A stretch of DNA of 64,000 bases, taken from the sequence record PQ066597.1. The stretch is one strand, 5' to 3'. The position numbers and the translations under genes were made by a program. Positions within the stretch are counted from its first letter, which is position 1. Each line of letters begins with the position of its first letter. The notes under the pieces are model-generated. The model saw only the letters and a program-made list of their open reading frames with translations, made no database searches and was not told the DNA's origin. Of the stretch, positions 1,709-60,851 are shown in pieces.

Positions 1709-1967
1709 TGATGACTTTTTCTACTGGTTTTACTTCGAATACTTCAACCATATCAGGTTCACTTTCGAATGGACGTTCATCCTGCATTTCTGTAAGACCA
1801 ACACTATAATTAACAGCCCAATAACGGTCGTCACCAAGCATACGAAACACCATTGTATGGTATTCAGACCATCGTCCGGAACCAGTCACTTCATTATCCA
1901 AAACTTCCCATCCTTCCGGACAATCACCCCAACACATCTCTCGTAAAATACTTTTTTCTACTTTCAT
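1689..1967 (-). CDS. hypothetical protein
   Basis: Tiled minus-strand ORF, ATGA overlap. Confidence 0.8.
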   Translation of the reverse strand: MKVEKSILREMCWGDCPEGWEVLDNEVTGSGRWSEYHTMVFRMLGDDRYWAVNYSVGLTEMQDERPFESEPDMVEVFEVKPVEKVIIEYVRV

Positions 1968-2275
1968 TTCATAGCACCTTCAATAGTTTCGGAAAGACAT
2001 CCACCACCGTTATACCACAAGGAAATACAATCAATGGTTCCATCTACATTACACTCAACGTCAGTATAACCACATGGGTCTAGTTCTTTATAATCAATAA
2101 CGCGATACACTGTATCGTTTAAGATCATGAATTCTTTTTCTGTTACCAGCTCATAAAATGCATCCCGTGGGTCAACGCTTTCATCCCTCCAATTGGGAAC
2201 GTTGGCTTCAAGAAACGACTCTACACCCAACCCAGTTGTGATTATCTTACACTTCACAAATTCCATACTACTCAT
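1964..2275 (-). CDS. hypothetical protein
   Basis: Tiled minus-strand ORF; no motif recognised. Confidence 0.8.
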   Translation of the reverse strand: MSSMEFVKCKIITTGLGVESFLEANVPNWRDESVDPRDAFYELVTEKEFMILNDTVYRVIDYKELDPCGYTDVECNVDGTIDCISLWYNGGGCLSETIEGAMK

Positions 2276-2747
2276 CGTTATACCTCATAAAATATGCATA
2301 CATGGAATGGTTCGTATCATTAGTAACCTCTTCCTTAAACCAGTATGGAATTTTATCAAAAGCCAATGCTTCTTCCACACTATTAAACTCTATTTCCGCA
2401 TACACGCATGGAAAATCTTCCATCAGGTCAACCTCAATCGTTACATCTTCACATGGGATCTTATATCTGGTCTTCCGAACTGGTTTACTATTTTGACCAT
2501 TGATGATTTCCCAAAACTCATCATGTCCCATATCAGTTTCTATTTCTTCGCGATCTAGCCCGAAACCGGTTTTGATAGTTTTTATATACCAATGACTACC
2601 ATAGTAGTCCTCACAATGACGATAACGAACACCGTCAATATACCATTGCTCTTGATGTTCAAGTTCTTCCTCGAACATATCAATCGCATACCATGGGATC
2701 ATAGGTCTATCAACCACCCATTTCCTTTCAATCTCACGAGCCATCAT
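2268..2747 (-). CDS. CYTH-like (triphosphate tunnel metalloenzyme) domain protein
   Basis: N-terminal REIERKW (ExExK) motif, RKTRY, IEVD, YAEIEF, EEVTND typical of CYTH family. Confidence 0.8.
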   Translation of the reverse strand: MMAREIERKWVVDRPMIPWYAIDMFEEELEHQEQWYIDGVRYRHCEDYYGSHWYIKTIKTGFGLDREEIETDMGHDEFWEIINGQNSKPVRKTRYKIPCEDVTIEVDLMEDFPCVYAEIEFNSVEEALAFDKIPYWFKEEVTNDTNHSMYAYFMRYNDE

Positions 2748-3124
2748 TTCCCCTTAATAGACCTTTGAATATCTTTACCCCACCGTGTTTTTGCACCGGA
2801 TACATCGATAATGGTATGATTCCAAAATTTACGATTTGATTTTACTTTTTCGAAATTTCCATCATGGATTTGTCTATAATTGTCCAACCAACCACTACGA
2901 ACAAATGATGGAACACGAATATCTTTAAATGCACTTTGGATCTTATTATCGTTTTTTGCAAACGTGATGATTGTGGAATTTATTGTTTCCCTAACGTCAC
3001 AACCTTTTGTGAATGTAACAGGAATCTCTGGGGTATCAATTAACACCAGACAATTCATGGAATCGTAATAAGAGATCTCTACAACCAGATCTAGTGTATC
3101 AGTTTTCTTTAACCAATTTAACAT
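2744..3124 (-). CDS. hypothetical protein
   Basis: Tiled minus-strand ORF with AAGGAG RBS. Confidence 0.8.
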   Translation of the reverse strand: MLNWLKKTDTLDLVVEISYYDSMNCLVLIDTPEIPVTFTKGCDVRETINSTIITFAKNDNKIQSAFKDIRVPSFVRSGWLDNYRQIHDGNFEKVKSNRKFWNHTIIDVSGAKTRWGKDIQRSIKGK

Positions 3125-3141
3125 TTTTACTCCTTAAAATA

Positions 3142-3232
3142 CGAACGTAGTGAGTACGCCTTCGGCGGTTCGCTTCGCTCTCTAATTATAGATCTTCTAT
3201 ATAAATACTTATAGAGATTTTATATTTTGATT
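3142..3232. repeat. structured non-coding element, copy 1 (inverted mate at 51541-51639)
   Basis: 3181-3224 is the exact reverse complement of 51549-51592 (44 bp); two further 13-bp identical blocks. Confidence 0.95.
3200..3207 (+). promoter_or_regulatory. T4-type late promoter box TATAAATA, antisense to flanking genes
   Basis: Exact TATAAATA in intergenic DNA inside the repeat element. Confidence 0.55.
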
Positions 3233-56339: not shown

Positions 56340-57293
56340 TTATTCACGAGCATTAGTCAACAGAAGTTTTGACTTAATCTTAGTGATTTGGTTCTTGCGA
56401 CCACGCCAGTGTTTACCACAGTGGGTACACTTATACTGCTTGAACTTACTGACTTCTGTATACGCAAATCCAGCATCTTCAAATTCATGATTTCCACATA
56501 CACAAGTGAATTTGTCTGAATCTGTATAAAGAGAGAAGTTCGGAAGACGATCCGACCATGGGGCTAATTTAACATACAGTTCTTGGAGAGATACTATATC
56601 ATCAATATTGTATTCTTCCATTTCTTTCCAAGCTTCTACATTACCAGCCAAGCATTCTTTCCACAATTCGAAACCGGGGAATTGAGTATGCTTAGATTTC
56701 TTGGTCTCTGTACATAGCTTATCGGTCATATATTCCAGCTTGTTGGAAGTAAAACCAAACGTGCGTTTTGCGATCTCAAGAGTATCAATATGCTTCACGG
56801 TAGAGAACGGTTTCATACCATGAACGATCATACGACTACGAATTTTTGGAATATCAAACCGACGACCATTCTGATGAAGAACGATATCAGCTTCGTCAAG
56901 AAGCTCCCATAGAACTTTCAGCATTTCTGAATCATCTTCGATATTTGGTGCATTTCGCTGGTCCATATAAATGATTTCATCACTGTCAAACCATTTAGCA
57001 GCAAAACTAAGCATATACCAATCGGACTCGATCATATTCAGACCAACGTTGGTCTTAAACAAGCGCCATACATGAGCCATAATCGGAGCGGTTTCAATAT
57101 CCAGAACTAGAACACGGGGACCGGTTTTGATATCGTCCACAATATTGTTCTCTTCCATGAAACGCTCGTAATAATAGTTTACGGAAGATTTAGAAATACC
57201 AAGTTCTTTCGCAATTGCTCGCGAACCCATACCCTTGTTCTCTTTCATCTCAACAATCTGTGAGATTACGGTTTCGTAATTACTGATAGCCAT
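56340..57293 (-). CDS. HTH + DEDD (RNase H-fold) 3'-5' exonuclease + Zn ribbon
   Basis: SRAIAKELGISKSSV HTH; LDIET, NGRRFD, HIDTL, YNIDD; CVCG/CTHC. Confidence 0.88.
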   Translation of the reverse strand: MAISNYETVISQIVEMKENKGMGSRAIAKELGISKSSVNYYYERFMEENNIVDDIKTGPRVLVLDIETAPIMAHVWRLFKTNVGLNMIESDWYMLSFAAKWFDSDEIIYMDQRNAPNIEDDSEMLKVLWELLDEADIVLHQNGRRFDIPKIRSRMIVHGMKPFSTVKHIDTLEIAKRTFGFTSNKLEYMTDKLCTETKKSKHTQFPGFELWKECLAGNVEAWKEMEEYNIDDIVSLQELYVKLAPWSDRLPNFSLYTDSDKFTCVCGNHEFEDAGFAYTEVSKFKQYKCTHCGKHWRGRKNQITKIKSKLLLTNARE

Positions 57294-57398: not shown

Positions 57399-58592
57399 TT
57401 AGAACTCGTGAGTTACGTCTGAGATTACTTCATAAGTCCAAGTACGAAGTTTCGCATTGTCGTAATCAGTTGGGATAGCAACGACGTGGGCTGGGTTGAT
57501 CTTAACCATCACAACCCGGTCATTCTCACAAGATGAATAGTATGGGATGTAGTGACGAGCAGCAGCATGAAGACCCGCAGCACAAGTATTGTTTCGGTCG
57601 TCATCTACCTCAAATGGCTCGACTCGTGGCTTAGAACCAATACTATTATCAAACGTGCGAGTGCGGATATCCTTATAATCATCGGTAACGCGCTTGTACG
57701 CTAGGAAATGACCATCGTTGGTGATTTTGATGTCACTATGAGTCAGGAAGTCAAAAAGCTCGTATACAGCCGCACGGCGCGGATTCTGTAACAGGTTTTT
57801 CAGGAAGGTAACCATATACTCAAACTCTTCCCCGGACGCCCACATATCAATGATTCTTCGGGTCATCGATGTATCAAGAACAATATCACGATAGTAGAGT
57901 GTGTCACCTTCAATCCGAATATCACCAGAAGAATAGGTTTTGATTGCTTCTTTTATAGAAATCAGGTTTACCGCACCGACCACATCATTGTCGCGGATCA
58001 GGAGTTGAAACGCATCTTCAAACCGTGGGTGGGCTCGGTCTGCAACGTATGGGGTTCCATCAATGAAGCAGTTAATAAAGTCATAACTTGCATTCCAAGA
58101 TACCACTGGGGTATGAACCGGTTCGATGATGTCCTTCAAATGGATTGTTTTATCAGACTTCTTCTGAATCCCCTTATAGCGACGAACTACATCACCTACT
58201 GTTGAACGAGGGATACCAGTTTGACGGGAAATTTCGTTTTGGCTGAATCCGCGATTATGAAGTCGAATAATTTTATCATCACGACTTTCTTCAACTTTAT
58301 TTTCAGAATAATCATGTACATCAAATTGCAAATCGATTTTATTAGTCCCAACCATCAATTTAATCAATTCTTTAATTGTAAGGGCTTCCCATCCTTCAAG
58401 TACATCGAGATCGCCAAGATCTATATCAAGTTCTTCCTCGATATACATAACAAGTTCTACAACATCGAGATCGTCTAGGTTGTAATATGCAAAAGTTCTG
58501 TTGTTGTCAAGTTCTTTTACTTTATAACCGGTTACATCGTAAATACCGCTACGAATCAATGCTTCAAGTTTTTCAATATGGATAGTTTCCAT
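57399..58592 (-). CDS. rIIB: rIIB with N-terminal ACP-like domain and HTH
   Basis: Follows rIIA; FLKNLLQNP, LFDFL, FLAYKRV, CAAGLH, VKINPAHVVAIPTDY rIIB motifs. Confidence 0.92.
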   Translation of the reverse strand: METIHIEKLEALIRSGIYDVTGYKVKELDNNRTFAYYNLDDLDVVELVMYIEEELDIDLGDLDVLEGWEALTIKELIKLMVGTNKIDLQFDVHDYSENKVEESRDDKIIRLHNRGFSQNEISRQTGIPRSTVGDVVRRYKGIQKKSDKTIHLKDIIEPVHTPVVSWNASYDFINCFIDGTPYVADRAHPRFEDAFQLLIRDNDVVGAVNLISIKEAIKTYSSGDIRIEGDTLYYRDIVLDTSMTRRIIDMWASGEEFEYMVTFLKNLLQNPRRAAVYELFDFLTHSDIKITNDGHFLAYKRVTDDYKDIRTRTFDNSIGSKPRVEPFEVDDDRNNTCAAGLHAAARHYIPYYSSCENDRVVMVKINPAHVVAIPTDYDNAKLRTWTYEVISDVTHEF

Positions 58593-58604
58593 TTTATTTC
58601 CTCA

Positions 58605-58628
58605 TTAAAAAGGGGCTTACACCCCTTT
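58605..58628 (-). terminator. hairpin terminator between rIIA and rIIB
   Basis: AAAGGGG/CCCCTTT stem overlapping the rIIA stop, then TTAA. Confidence 0.55.
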
Positions 58629-60851
58629 GTAGTTTTCCATAATAAGTTTAGTTGCAAGTTCGAACTCTTCGTTTTTTACACAACTATAATTTTTCTTCAA
58701 CCTAAGAATCGCACATTCCATGGGGAATTGCTTTTTCATTTCGTCATAAAAATTATGATATACATCATACATACTCTGACGATGGTTTTCAACAACATCG
58801 GTATAAACTTGATATTCATGTTCAGTCAAATATTCTTGAGCATGAACATAAATATTACCAAGATCATGATCCCAATCACCGGATTCCGAGATACCAAAAT
58901 AGTCCTTCATTTCCCGAGTAATTTCCATATCGACCCTTGGCTTATCAGACCTATTGATATTCCAACCAATTTTATTACCCTTTAAATTGTTATTGAGATA
59001 TTCAACAAGTTTACCTTTGATCATTTCCTTTGTAATGAGAGTCAAATTCTCATTCATGTTAGCCCGTCGTTCAAGGGTTTTCGGAAATGCATACAACGTT
59101 GTATCAAACATCTCAGATAACCAACTTTGAAGTCCATCTGTAACTTCATGACCATCAACAACAATATATTCGCCAGAACGAAGACCATACAGCCCACTAA
59201 GCTCGTGTACATCCTTGGCAAGGAAATTGCCAGTACTGCGATACCCTTTATTATAATAATGCGAGTTGTCTGGTTTGTAACGTGGAGTTTTAGCCCTATT
59301 CCGCTGTGCTTCTAAACGACGTTGGCGCTTCTCTTCTGCTTCTTTCTCTTCAATTTCTTGAACGTGCTTATCATACAACTTCTCTACATGAAAAACATCG
59401 ATATCGTCTTTGTGGTAACGCTTTGCAATCTGGATAAAGAGATTTCGAGTTACATTCTTGAAAGGTTTGCGAGAATAAGGGTAATCGCTCATAACAACAA
59501 CCCGTTCATTAGGAATGATACCATACTTCATAAGAAGCTTGATCCTTACCTTCCACTTACCATCCATATTAGACAGAAGGATTGGGAATGGATATCGCTT
59601 ATTCTTTACTGACGGCATGAAATAGTCATTAAACTCGATTTTACGAGACGACCCGTAATATCTTGCACGTTCAAGATTCCAAACATTTCGCACCGCATTA
59701 CTAAATGTATCGATATAAACGAAATTTTTGTTTTTATAACTGTAATCCACACAGAAATCTTTAAACAAAGACCATTCTTTCGAAGATGTAATACTTTCGT
59801 AGAAGAAGCGCCAATCTTGAAGAGACTTGCCGTTATGGTCAATAATCTTTGATACTTTGTTAAAGATATGCTCACCAAAATCCATAGACAAAATAGCATG
59901 AATTTTACTTCGAGCATCCTTTCCATGTTCAGAAACCTTTTTATTGACTTCATCAATAACTTGGTTCGATTGGGATTTAAAATAAGAATTCAGTGTATTC
60001 AGTGTGTGTTTATCAAGACTCAATTCTTCCCGGTTCGGGAGAGGATTGAGAGACCCAACAGGAAAATCGATAAAGTTATATGAATTATTAAAGAATACCG
60101 AACAAACCTCATTTTCGTAAAGCTTTGCTGGGATCTTGTAAGAAACACCACCCATAACAGCATATACGCCATTATCCATGATGGAACCATAGTAACCAGA
60201 TGACTTGTAGTTAGTCAACTCGAAATTCTGATTGATGATGTTTGGATAAAATCCATCTTTATCAAATGTGTGGTACACCACCCGAGCTTCATTCCGAACT
60301 TCGGTAATATCATCTTGATCGATAGGGATTACGATTTCGATACCTGTGGGCTCGTCTGACGGTTCTTCGAAGATGGGGACACACTTTGGTATACCGTTGT
60401 TCATGAAGATGCTATAGACGGTTTTGAGACCCTTACACCACGATGTTACAGTGAATGTTGTTGTGTAGCAGAACGGACTTTTAGAACCAAGACCAAATGC
60501 ACCGATAAAATCGTCAGAATCTTCCTTGGTTGATGCAAAATATGTGGTGAACAAGTTGAAAATACCATCCTTGTCCATACCAATACCATAATCGCGGAGT
60601 CTCCATTGTAAATTAATATCAGACGGAAGCTCTACATCAAAATATTTCGGTGGGGTTCCACCAATCTTTTCCAATGCAATGTGACCATCGATTGCGTTAC
60701 AGCTCAATTCACGAATGAAAGCTCGGATCTTGAATTTATAAAGCCCAGAACTAAGAATGGTATAAGCTTTTTCATCAAACTTCATACCAAAATCGCGGGA
60801 CTCTTCCATAACAGTCCCAAATACAGGTTGTTTATTTGTAACAATTTTCAT
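58617..60851 (-). CDS. rIIA: rIIA protein
   Basis: ILSSGLY...IRELSCNAIDGH, RDYGIGM, STK...IGAFGLGSKSPF GHKL-type N-terminus. Confidence 0.95.
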   Translation of the reverse strand: MKIVTNKQPVFGTVMEESRDFGMKFDEKAYTILSSGLYKFKIRAFIRELSCNAIDGHIALEKIGGTPPKYFDVELPSDINLQWRLRDYGIGMDKDGIFNLFTTYFASTKEDSDDFIGAFGLGSKSPFCYTTTFTVTSWCKGLKTVYSIFMNNGIPKCVPIFEEPSDEPTGIEIVIPIDQDDITEVRNEARVVYHTFDKDGFYPNIINQNFELTNYKSSGYYGSIMDNGVYAVMGGVSYKIPAKLYENEVCSVFFNNSYNFIDFPVGSLNPLPNREELSLDKHTLNTLNSYFKSQSNQVIDEVNKKVSEHGKDARSKIHAILSMDFGEHIFNKVSKIIDHNGKSLQDWRFFYESITSSKEWSLFKDFCVDYSYKNKNFVYIDTFSNAVRNVWNLERARYYGSSRKIEFNDYFMPSVKNKRYPFPILLSNMDGKWKVRIKLLMKYGIIPNERVVVMSDYPYSRKPFKNVTRNLFIQIAKRYHKDDIDVFHVEKLYDKHVQEIEEKEAEEKRQRRLEAQRNRAKTPRYKPDNSHYYNKGYRSTGNFLAKDVHELSGLYGLRSGEYIVVDGHEVTDGLQSWLSEMFDTTLYAFPKTLERRANMNENLTLITKEMIKGKLVEYLNNNLKGNKIGWNINRSDKPRVDMEITREMKDYFGISESGDWDHDLGNIYVHAQEYLTEHEYQVYTDVVENHRQSMYDVYHNFYDEMKKQFPMECAILRLKKNYSCVKNEEFELATKLIMENYKGV

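What the first reader, a model, noticed from the sequence alone, without database searches (positions are those of the whole stretch)
58353..58592. Acyl-carrier-protein mimic (Ser to Asp) fused to the N-terminus of rIIB
Seen: rIIB residues 40-56, DDLDVVELVMYIEEELD, match E. coli ACP DSLDTVELVMALEEEFD (recalled) at 12/17 positions, within an ~80-aa acidic four-helix-sized domain, in frame and with its own RBS. The phosphopantetheine Ser is Asp41 (GAT at 58470-58472, at least two changes from any Ser codon). Established: that Ser is essential for carrier function, and ACP also binds non-biosynthetic partners such as MukB and SpoT. T4 rIIB has no such domain to my knowledge. Inference: a non-modifiable, charge-mimicking ACP decoy that recruits or blocks an ACP-dependent host or defence protein at the rII complex.
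Basis: partly seen in the sequence, partly recalled or inferred. Interest (0 to 1): 0.8.

Follow-up and report, generated by a model that had tools for sequence, protein, structure and literature searches.

The report
Serine-less ACP-like domain on phage rIIB
The rIIB protein of this Aeromonas T4-like phage starts with a real acyl-carrier-protein-fold domain that has lost its cofactor-attachment serine, and ACP domains turn out to be fused to rIIB repeatedly in other phages, which gives a testable lead to the still unknown mechanism of the classic rII genes.

Summary
The window is Aeromonas phage vB_AdhaM_G2 (Ceceduovirus). Its rIIB gene (57399-58592, minus strand, 397 aa) encodes an ACP-like domain (residues 1-90), a linker, an HTH (104-142) and the rIIB core (161-397). 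The N-terminal domain passes Pfam PP-binding (28.7 bits against a cut-off of 20.8). It matches E. coli ACP, folds as an ACP helical bundle (pLDDT 88), and Foldseek returns only ACPs. The attachment serine is Asp41 (GAT, 58470-58472). T4 rIIB lacks the domain.

New here:
- The domain is under purifying selection (dN/dS 0.11-0.24).
- It is shared by one clade of Aeromonas-type rIIBs. The serine position there reads D, G, E or, in one case, S.
- An unrelated clade of uncultured-phage rIIBs carries a C-terminal ACP. It mostly keeps Ser, and the losses are again to D or E.
- The acidic helix-II residues stay invariant.

The domain is therefore a non-carrier ACP fold, most likely a docking or mimicry module. 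The partner, and the "decoy" role, remain inferred. Asp41 may reflect helix capping as easily as phosphate mimicry. I found no literature on it. It is a new variant of a known kind, of moderately high interest.

The parts
57399..58592 (-). rIIB gene, 397 codons plus stop. Order of parts: ACP-like domain, linker, HTH, linker, rIIB core.
   Evidence: ORF list. PHROG 609 RIIB, E 7e-106. Annotated rIIB in PQ066597.1. 38% identical to T4 rIIB from residue about 96.
58323..58592 (-). ACP-like (PP-binding fold) domain, residues 1-90, net charge -13.
   Evidence: PF00550 at 28.7 bits against a cut-off of 20.8. PDB phmmer finds E. coli AcpP at about 1e-5. AF2 pLDDT 88. Foldseek top 50 hits are all ACPs. 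dN/dS 0.11-0.24.
58470..58472 (-). Codon 41, GAT = Asp, at the position of the phosphopantetheine-attachment Ser of the DSL motif.
   Evidence: Sequence. The same alignment column reads S (AGT) in P0002, G (GGA) in phage 65 and E in ZPAH1 and others.
58425..58472 (-). Helix II ('recognition helix') equivalent, residues 41-56. This is the most conserved stretch of the domain.
   Evidence: L42, D43, E46, L47 and E52 are invariant, and D40, M49 nearly so, in ten rIIB N-domains. D43, E46 and E52 are invariant in 30 rIIB-linked ACP domains. Helix 41-55 in the models.
58284..58322 (-). Linker, residues 91-103. Residues 92-100 are predicted disordered.
   Evidence: pLDDT below 50 for residues 92-100.
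58167..58283 (-). Helix-turn-helix domain, residues 104-142. T4 rIIB has the same domain at its N-terminus.
   Evidence: HTH_SB E 7e-9; HTH_23 at 24.8 bits against a cut-off of 24.6. Aligns with the T4 rIIB N-terminus.
57402..58112 (-). rIIB core (Pfam Phage_T4_rIIB, PF26926), residues 161-397, with the invariant motif C337-x-x-G340-L-H342.
   Evidence: PF26926 is precomputed on the homologues. Invariant columns in 179 cores.
58597..58603 (-). Ribosome-binding site GAGGAAA of rIIB, 4 nt upstream of the ATG at 58592.
   Evidence: Read from the sequence.
58617..60851 (-). rIIA gene (744 aa), immediately upstream and the expected partner of rIIB.
   Evidence: PHROG 612 RIIA, E 3e-162. Annotation.

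Best explanation
Residues 1-90 of this rIIB are a former acyl carrier protein domain that no longer carries anything. It keeps the ACP helical bundle and the acidic face of helix II, and it has Asp where the phosphopantetheine serine was.

I think it works as a docking or mimicry module. It presents a host-AcpP-like surface, with a fixed negative charge at the old attachment site. This would tether the rIIA/rIIB complex to a basic site that normally binds AcpP, or occupy that site. The target is most likely a host ACP-client protein at or near the inner membrane.

- **Shown:** fold, family, loss of the serine, selection, and recurrence of the fusion.
- **Inferred:** that helix II is the working surface, that the partner is a host ACP client, and whether the effect is recruitment or blockade.
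For: - **ACP family and fold.**
- **Closest solved relatives.** These are gamma-proteobacterial FAS-type AcpP: E. coli at 26-29 bits, other ACP types at 15-20 bits.
- **Carrier function lost.** Asp41 is present, and there is no Ser in a DSL context.
- **Retained, not decaying.** dN/dS is 0.11-0.24, similar to the rest of the gene at 0.08-0.19. The domain is kept across lineages whose N-domains are only 17-43% identical.
- **What stays invariant.** The acidic helix-II residues D40, D43, E46 and E52 correspond to E. coli D35, D38, E41 and E47. By established ACP biochemistry these contact AcpS and FAS or Lpx partner enzymes. They are not needed for the fold in PKS/NRPS carrier domains.
- **Recurrent association.** In the core tree the N-side fusions form one clade (99*). 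C-terminal ACP fusions sit elsewhere, in about 23 clusters, directly after rIIA genes. The N-domain profile scores the C-side domains at 20-35 bits, below generic ACPs at a median of 45.8 bits. This points to separate acquisitions.
- **Serine losses.** In both sets they end in D, E or G only. In the C-side clade this required at least two nucleotide changes.
- **Precedent.** ACP serves as a non-biosynthetic subunit of other machines in the PDB hits: MukBEF, NFS1-ISD11, MmpL5, EmbABC and Ycf2-FtsHi.
Against: - No partner was identified, and no complex could be modelled with the tools available.
- Conservation of helix II is also what any ACP-derived domain would show for some time after losing Ser.
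- Extensions outside the rIIB core are acidic in general: a mean of -8 charges per 100 residues in 156 C-terminal extensions. A non-specific acidic appendage could therefore be enough.
- Most C-side fusions keep Ser, with TCT, TCA and TCG codons. The prosthetic group may matter for the general rIIB-ACP link, and a Ser-less domain cannot supply it.
- Phage 65 has Gly, not an acid, at the position.
- In T4 the N-terminal part of rIIB is dispensable for function. This rests on the classical r1589 deletion and the frameshift work, which I recalled and did not check here.
Confidence: 0.4

Rival explanations
1. Intra-complex module. The ACP-like domain binds rIIA, the rIIB core or the adjacent basic HTH. 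It would serve assembly or auto-inhibition and would have no host target.
For: The only constant neighbours of ACP domains in all three architectures are the rIIB core and an upstream rIIA. In G2 the domain carries -13 charge and the HTH +5, joined by a disordered linker. Mitochondrial ACP-LYR proteins are a precedent for ACP acting as a structural subunit (established knowledge; one search lists such complexes).
Against: C-side fusions have no HTH, so HTH regulation cannot be the general logic. More than 99% of rIIB proteins assemble and work without any ACP domain. The full-length AF2 model has pTM 0.53, so it gives no confident domain packing.
Confidence: 0.25
2. Generic acidic appendage or evolutionary leftover. 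It was once a carrier domain and is now kept only for solubility, spacing or charge, with no specific partner. Asp41 simply preserves the helix N-cap.
For: rIIB extensions are variable and mostly acidic, some extremely so, for example P0014 with -53 in 150 residues. The residues seen at the Ser position (S, D, G, E) are those favoured at helix N-termini (established knowledge). Pfam no longer detects the domain in phage 65 or P0008, so it is drifting. The AS-szw N-domain was swapped by recombination without visible consequence.
Against: dN/dS is 0.11-0.24, and four surface acidic positions are invariant or nearly so across domains only 17-43% identical. The full bundle is retained at high model confidence. 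A separate acquisition of the same fold at the other end of rIIB is not expected for a random acidic tail.
Confidence: 0.2
3. The rIIB core is itself an ACP client, for instance a Cys-His enzyme or a sensor acting on an acyl- or pantetheine-thioester. The fused ACP is its substrate carrier. In Aeromonas phages it has become a pseudo-substrate or regulatory plug.
For: Rosetta-stone logic applies: ACP is fused to the core at either end, and Ser is kept with synonymous codon variation in about 20 C-side clusters. The core has 179/179 invariant C337, G340, H342, K300, Y348 and K381. It has no structural relative in the PDB.
Against: No homology to any known enzyme was found. Invariant Cys and His could be structural or metal-binding. 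Most rIIBs have no ACP. No enzymatic activity has ever been reported for rIIB, to my knowledge and in the papers read.
Confidence: 0.1
4. The domain is still a carrier, modified at a non-canonical residue or by a phage enzyme.
For: None directly. One close orthologue (P0002, 72% identical) has a canonical GLDSLD motif.
Against: G2 has Asp at the site, and the only Ser in the domain (S15) lies in helix I, outside any DSL context. PPTases need the Ser hydroxyl (established knowledge). tblastn with E. coli AcpP found no canonical ACP in any Aeromonas phage record, and no PPTase is annotated in the 40-70 kb stretch of the G2 record that I read; the remaining ~160 kb of annotation was not checked.
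Confidence: 0.03

Closest known systems
T4 rIIB (Tequatrovirus; Pfam PF26926 Phage_T4_rIIB, PHROG 609)
   Same: The gene sits in the same position after rIIA. The HTH plus core architecture is the same from G2 residue about 96 onward, at 38% identity, with all invariant core residues shared. The presumed role is the same: it counters RexAB-type exclusion, and the protein can itself trigger a CARD/gasdermin system (PMC10312443; PMC13716836).
   Different: T4 rIIB has no ACP-like domain. Among 2575 phage records with an rIIB core, only about 21 carry the N-side domain, all of them Aeromonas phages of the Ceceduovirus, phage 65 and ZPAH1 groups.
Bacterial type II FAS acyl carrier protein AcpP (PF00550), including its moonlighting roles as a subunit of MukBEF, IscS/NFS1-ISD11, SpoT and membrane complexes
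   Same: The helical bundle is the same. Helix II is 12/17 identical, and all of its acidic residues are kept. E. coli AcpP is the best solved match.
   Different: There is no attachment serine, so it cannot become holo- or acyl-ACP. It is covalently part of a 397-aa phage protein. Overall identity is only about 39% over 54 residues.
C-terminal ACP fusions to rIIB in uncultured large phages (P0211-P0227, P0231, P0234, P0235, P0241, P0249, P0280; example L010 1960-3201)
   Same: An rIIB core is joined to an ACP domain in a gene directly after rIIA. The serine is occasionally lost to D or E.
   Different: The ACP lies at the other end of the protein and there is no HTH. Ser is kept in 20 of 23 clusters. 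These domains are no closer to the G2 domain than generic ACPs are, so this is probably a separate acquisition.
Serine-less ACP-like proteins outside rIIB (standalone phage ORFs P0105 and L011; bacterial 110-150 aa proteins with signal, lipobox or TM N-termini such as P0074, P0075, P0084)
   Same: They share the D[ED]LD motif in place of DSLD and a conserved helix II. Their sources name them only 'acyl carrier protein'.
   Different: They are not fused to rIIB. Many are apparently exported or membrane-anchored. Their function is unknown, so they explain nothing yet.

Membership tests
ACP / PP-binding superfamily (PF00550) | Sequence match to the family model above its curated threshold | tested here: met
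   28.7 bits for residues 1-80 and 24.5 bits for the full protein, against a cut-off of 20.8. A profile of the domain retrieves 3307 ACPs.
ACP / PP-binding superfamily (PF00550) | Helical-bundle ACP fold with a long helix II after the attachment loop | tested here: met
   Predicted only. AF2 gives pLDDT 88 and pTM 0.78. The Foldseek PDB top 50 are all ACPs, TM 0.51-0.75 (nearly all 0.58 or above), rmsd mostly 2.2-4 A. No experimental structure exists.
Functional acyl/peptidyl carrier protein | Conserved Ser of the (D)SL motif that receives 4'-phosphopantetheine | tested here: not met
   The residue is Asp41 (GAT, 58470-58472). It is a fold relative, not a carrier.
Functional acyl/peptidyl carrier protein | Actual phosphopantetheinylation or acylation | not testable with these tools
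   This needs mass spectrometry of the expressed protein.
rIIB (PF26926, PHROG 609) | Homology to the rIIB core, including its invariant residues | tested here: met
   PHROG 609 E 7e-106. 38% identity to T4 rIIB. All 179/179-invariant residues are present.
rIIB (PF26926, PHROG 609) | Gene directly downstream of rIIA in a T4-like early region | tested here: met
   rIIA (PHROG 612, E 3e-162) ends 24 nt upstream, and the topoisomerase large subunit lies further upstream.
rIIB (PF26926, PHROG 609) | rII phenotype (rapid lysis, exclusion by Rex-type systems) | not testable with these tools
   This needs phage genetics.
   No complex-prediction or interaction tool was available. Only surface conservation supports the idea.

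The most novel reading that the evidence does not exclude
The repeated fusion of ACP domains to either end of the rIIB core means that rII function is mechanistically tied to host AcpP or acyl-ACP. The invariant Cys-x-x-Gly-Leu-His core would be an ACP client, either an enzyme or a sensor of a pantetheine-linked group at the membrane. The Aeromonas-phage domain would be a constitutive holo-ACP mimic in which Asp41 stands in for the phosphoserine. ACP-less rIIBs such as T4's would use the host's own AcpP.
Probability: 0.12. Interest if true: 0.85.

Novelty: new variant of a known kind. Interest (0 to 1): 0.6.

Why it matters
rIIA and rIIB are among the most famous genes in genetics. Yet the 2023 and 2026 papers I read still describe how they protect T-even phages from RexAB as unclear, or give no mechanism.

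Accessory domains fused to a protein of unknown mechanism are one of the few sequence-only clues to its partners. Here the same fold, ACP, has been attached to the rIIB core at least twice. It is kept under selection, and its acidic recognition face is preserved even after the cofactor serine is lost.

This points to ACP-binding sites, whether host lipid-synthesis or other AcpP clients or the rII complex itself, as concrete candidates that can be tested by pull-down and by domain deletion. It also adds a phage example to a little-noticed class of serine-less ACP-like proteins.

Tried and rejected
- **Artefactual or split gene: rejected.** The ORF is intact in 15 near-identical genomes and in orthologues down to 50% identity. 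There is no internal SD-ATG at the domain boundary. The one apparently ACP-less relative, P0007, is a gene call cut by a contig end, and the rest of the domain is visible upstream.
- **Ubiquitin-like: rejected.** The polyubiquitin rows at the top of the PDB search are sums of nine sub-threshold repeats.
- **Gene fission next to rIIB: rejected.** The standalone ACP-like ORF P0105 sits in a phage-like contig, but none of its called neighbours within the 8-kb flanks carries an rIIB family hit.
- **A second ACP in the phage: not found.** The G2 domain hits one place in its own genome. E. coli AcpP finds no Aeromonas phage at E<=1e-3. I did not scan the 165 kb of the genome outside the window with a profile.
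- **Positive selection on the domain: rejected.** The excess of changes in AS-szw comes with dS 0.26 against 0.02 in the core. It is a recombination patch, with ω about 0.22.
- **Single origin of N-side and C-side ACP domains: not supported.** See the profile scores. Short domains limit this test.
- **Literature: nothing found.** Searches for rIIB with ACP or PP-binding found nothing relevant. Searches for old rII-phospholipid work found nothing usable in the held library.

Full report
**Identity of the window and the gene**

The 1194-base ORF at 57399..58592 (minus strand) is 100% identical, at the same coordinates, to the rIIB gene of Aeromonas phage vB_AdhaM_G2 (PQ066597.1). It is 96-99% identical to 14 other records of CC2-like Aeromonas phages. 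The four relatives whose records I read are classed in Straboviridae, Emmerichvirinae, genus Ceceduovirus. It lies 24 nt downstream of a 744-aa rIIA (PHROG 612, E 3e-162), in the usual T4-like early region with the topoisomerase large subunit upstream. The record annotates it as one CDS and does not mention an extra domain.

**Checking the observation**

- Residues 40-56 are DDLDVVELVMYIEEELD, and codon 41 is GAT at 58470-58472.
- Pfam PP-binding (PF00550) matches residues 14-78 at 28.7 bits when the first 80 residues are scanned alone, and at 24.5 bits in the whole protein. The curated cut-off is 20.8.
- PHROGs "acyl carrier protein" families also match.
- phmmer against PDB sequences finds E. 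coli AcpP chains at E about 1e-5 as single full-domain stretches. The polyubiquitin rows above them are sums of repeats, none of which passes on its own.
- BLASTP against E. coli AcpP gives 21/54 identities.
- A profile of ten rIIB N-domains, searched against 1.84 billion representative proteins, returns 3307 hits at E<=0.001. These are two rIIB clusters and then ordinary ACPs.

**Fold**

The full-length AF2 model has mean pLDDT 85.9. It gives an N-terminal bundle with helices 6-21, 41-55 and 73-82 and a short helix at 68-70. A disordered linker follows (92-100), then a three-helix HTH (104-139), a second linker (147-158) and the rIIB core.

The domain modelled alone, with 30 rIIB-linked ACP sequences, has pLDDT 88 and pTM 0.78. 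Foldseek against the PDB returns ACPs in all top 50 places. Probability is about 1, target-normalised TM is 0.51-0.75 (nearly all 0.58 or above) and rmsd is mostly 2.2-4 Å. The E-values (4e-3 and weaker) are modest because the domain is small. In the viral library the first hit is the rIIB of Aeromonas phage 65.2, followed by phage carrier-domain proteins.

**T4 comparison**

T4 rIIB (312 aa) aligns with G2 only from residue about 96, that is, the HTH and the core, at 38% identity.

**Is it translated and kept?**

- The RBS GAGGAAA sits 4 nt before the ATG, and no SD-ATG is present at the domain boundary.
- Nei-Gojobori dN/dS among five Ceceduovirus genes is 0.11-0.24 for codons 1-90, against 0.08-0.19 for the core. 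The domain is under purifying selection.
- AS-szw shows 12 non-synonymous and 12 synonymous differences in the domain (dS 0.26) but dS 0.02 in the core. This is a recombination patch, not adaptive change.
- The one apparently domain-less relative (P0007) is a gene call truncated at a contig end.

**Distribution on the N side**

Homologues with the domain are:
- the Ceceduovirus group;
- a syntenic metagenomic phage (P0002, 72% identity);
- phages 65, 65.2 and avDM6;
- ZPAH1 and Aswh_1;
- P0008;
- P0010 and P0011, in which the HTH precedes the ACP-like domain.

In a tree of 179 rIIB cores these sequences, together with P0009, form one clade with 99% support.

At the Ser column the residues are D in the G2 group, S in P0002 (codon AGT), G in the 65 group (GGA) and E in the rest. 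These four residues are linked by single-nucleotide steps (AGY-GGY-GAY-GAR). Whether the Ser of P0002 is ancestral or a reversal cannot be decided.

L42, D43, E46, L47 and E52 are invariant, and D40, M49 and I73 nearly so, although the domains are only 17-43% identical to G2. D40, D43, E46 and E52 correspond to E. coli D35, D38, E41 and E47. By established ACP biochemistry these acidic helix-II residues contact AcpS and partner enzymes.

**A second, separate rIIB-ACP association**

A scan of viral contigs turned up L010. Its ORF 1960-3201 is an rIIB core followed by a C-terminal ACP with canonical GADSLD. Searching with this protein found about 23 clusters of such proteins, with PF26926 and PF00550 both precomputed. 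All come from uncultured phages, some on contigs of 95-362 kb. None is in the collection of isolated phages, where 2575 records have an rIIB core.

In the five such loci I inspected (L017, L019, L020-L022) the gene lies directly after a 739-770 aa gene; the two I scanned against PHROGs are rIIA. Ser is kept in 20 of the clusters, with TCT, TCA and TCG codons in three loci, so it is maintained by selection. Three clusters have D or E (GAT, GAA, GAG), which needs at least two changes from TCN. P0235 and P0241 are syntenic sisters, so this represents about two independent losses.

The N-side profile scores these C-side domains at 20-35 bits, less than generic ACPs at a median of 45.8 bits. In the core tree the two sets are apart. 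The ACP fold has therefore been joined to the rIIB core at least twice.

**Wider context**

Among the best 150 matches of the N-side profile, 57 domains, about 46 of them outside rIIB, have E, D or G at the Ser column. The profile itself favours these residues, so this is not an unbiased frequency. Many are 110-150 aa proteins with signal, lipobox or TM N-termini that their sources call "acyl carrier protein". Two are standalone ORFs in large phage contigs. Serine-less ACP-like proteins are therefore a real but uncharacterised class.

Extensions outside the rIIB core are acidic in general, with a mean of -8 charges per 100 residues over 156 C-terminal extensions.

**Interpretation**

What is shown:
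- a non-carrier ACP-fold domain;
- selection to keep it;
- recurrent fusion of this fold to rIIB;
- conservation centred on the acidic helix II;
- Ser replaced only by D, E or G.

What follows from established biochemistry: without the Ser hydroxyl the domain cannot be converted to holo- or acyl-ACP.

What is inferred: the domain acts through its helix-II face as a docking or mimicry module. I put the partner as a host AcpP client (confidence 0.4), ahead of an intra-complex role (0.25). The reasons are these. Almost all rIIBs assemble without the domain. The closest solved relatives are host-type FAS AcpPs. AcpP is a known accessory subunit of non-biosynthetic and membrane machines (examples).

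The "charge-mimic" reading of Asp41 is compatible with the D/E bias. So is simple helix N-capping, and Gly in phage 65 argues against a strict charge requirement.

The Ser-retaining C-side fusions show that the general rIIB-ACP link may involve a real holo-ACP. This keeps open a bolder reading in which the invariant CxxGLH core is itself an ACP client.

**Literature**

Full-text searches found nothing on rIIB with ACP or PP-binding. Recent work still treats rIIA/rIIB as RexAB counter-defence without giving a mechanism; PMC10312443 calls it unclear. It also shows that T6 RIIB alone triggers a CARD/gasdermin system and is toxic when expressed in E. coli (PMC10312443; PMC13716836). Automated pipelines have tagged some of these proteins with PF00550 or named them "acyl carrier protein". 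The architecture is therefore visible in databases but, as far as I could find, has not been interpreted.

**Verdict**

This is a new variant of a known kind: rIIB with a serine-less ACP-fold accessory domain, part of a recurrent rIIB-ACP association. Interest is 0.6. It is not a demonstrated mechanism, but it is a concrete and cheap-to-test lead into an old open question.

Noticed in passing
window 57402-58112 (rIIB core; C337 = 57582-57584, H342 = 57567-57569): Across 179 diverse rIIB cores, G294, K300, C337, G340, H342, Y348, P367, P374 and K381 are invariant (179/179), and N270 and R383 are 178/179. They form a C-[S/A]-x-G-L-H motif that looks like a catalytic or metal site. Foldseek found no PDB relative for the core.
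   Followed up: partly
window 58609-58628: A perfect 7-bp hairpin (AAAGGGG, 6-nt loop, CCCCTTT) spans the rIIA stop codon, just upstream of the rIIB RBS. It is palindromic, so the terminator scan calls it on the + strand. On the coding strand the T-run is short.
   Followed up: partly
L012 (Aeromonas phage AS-szw rIIB) against window 58323-58592: The ACP-like domain of AS-szw differs from G2 at dS 0.26, while the rest of the gene is at dS 0.02. This is a recombination patch confined to the N-terminal domain.
   Followed up: yes
P0074, P0075, P0077, P0079, P0084, P0097, P0101 and others: There is a sizeable class of serine-less ACP-like proteins with a D[ED]LD motif. They are 110-220 aa long with signal-peptide, lipobox or transmembrane N-termini, and their sources name them only 'acyl carrier protein'. 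Their function is unknown.
   Followed up: partly
L002 8001-8300 (P0105); L011 about 2902-3195: Standalone serine-less ACP-like ORFs of 97-99 aa (DELD or DDLD) that end in ...LGL. They lie among small early-type genes on 82-kb and 436-kb phage contigs, and none of P0105's called neighbours carries an rIIB family hit; the L011 neighbourhood was not examined.
   Followed up: partly
L017, L019, L020, L021, L022: In phages with a C-terminal rIIB-ACP the local order is conserved: rIIA, rIIB-ACP, usually one small ORF, an AAA+ ATPase (weak or faint DUF815 and NACHT/nSTAND3-like hits in some), and further on a Metallophos phosphoesterase. L017 also has a Band_7/SPFH protein two genes downstream.
   Followed up: no
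P0010, P0011 (rIIB homologues, 379-381 aa): The domain order is swapped relative to G2: HTH first, then the ACP-like domain (DELD), then the core. P0009 (551 aa), in the same clade, has a 311-residue N-terminal region in which Pfam sees no ACP.
   Followed up: partly
rIIB homologues P0014, P0040, P0277 and others: Most rIIB-family proteins from metagenomes are a core plus a variable C-terminal extension that is strongly acidic on average, for example -53 charges in 150 residues in P0014.
   Followed up: partly
window 56340-57293 (minus strand): The gene just downstream of rIIB is annotated as a DNA polymerase exonuclease subunit, and its orthologue has an RNase_H_2 hit. Its N-terminus reads like an HTH (…GMGSRAIAKELGISKSSVNYY…), similar in style to the rIIB HTH. 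This was seen by eye only.
   Followed up: no
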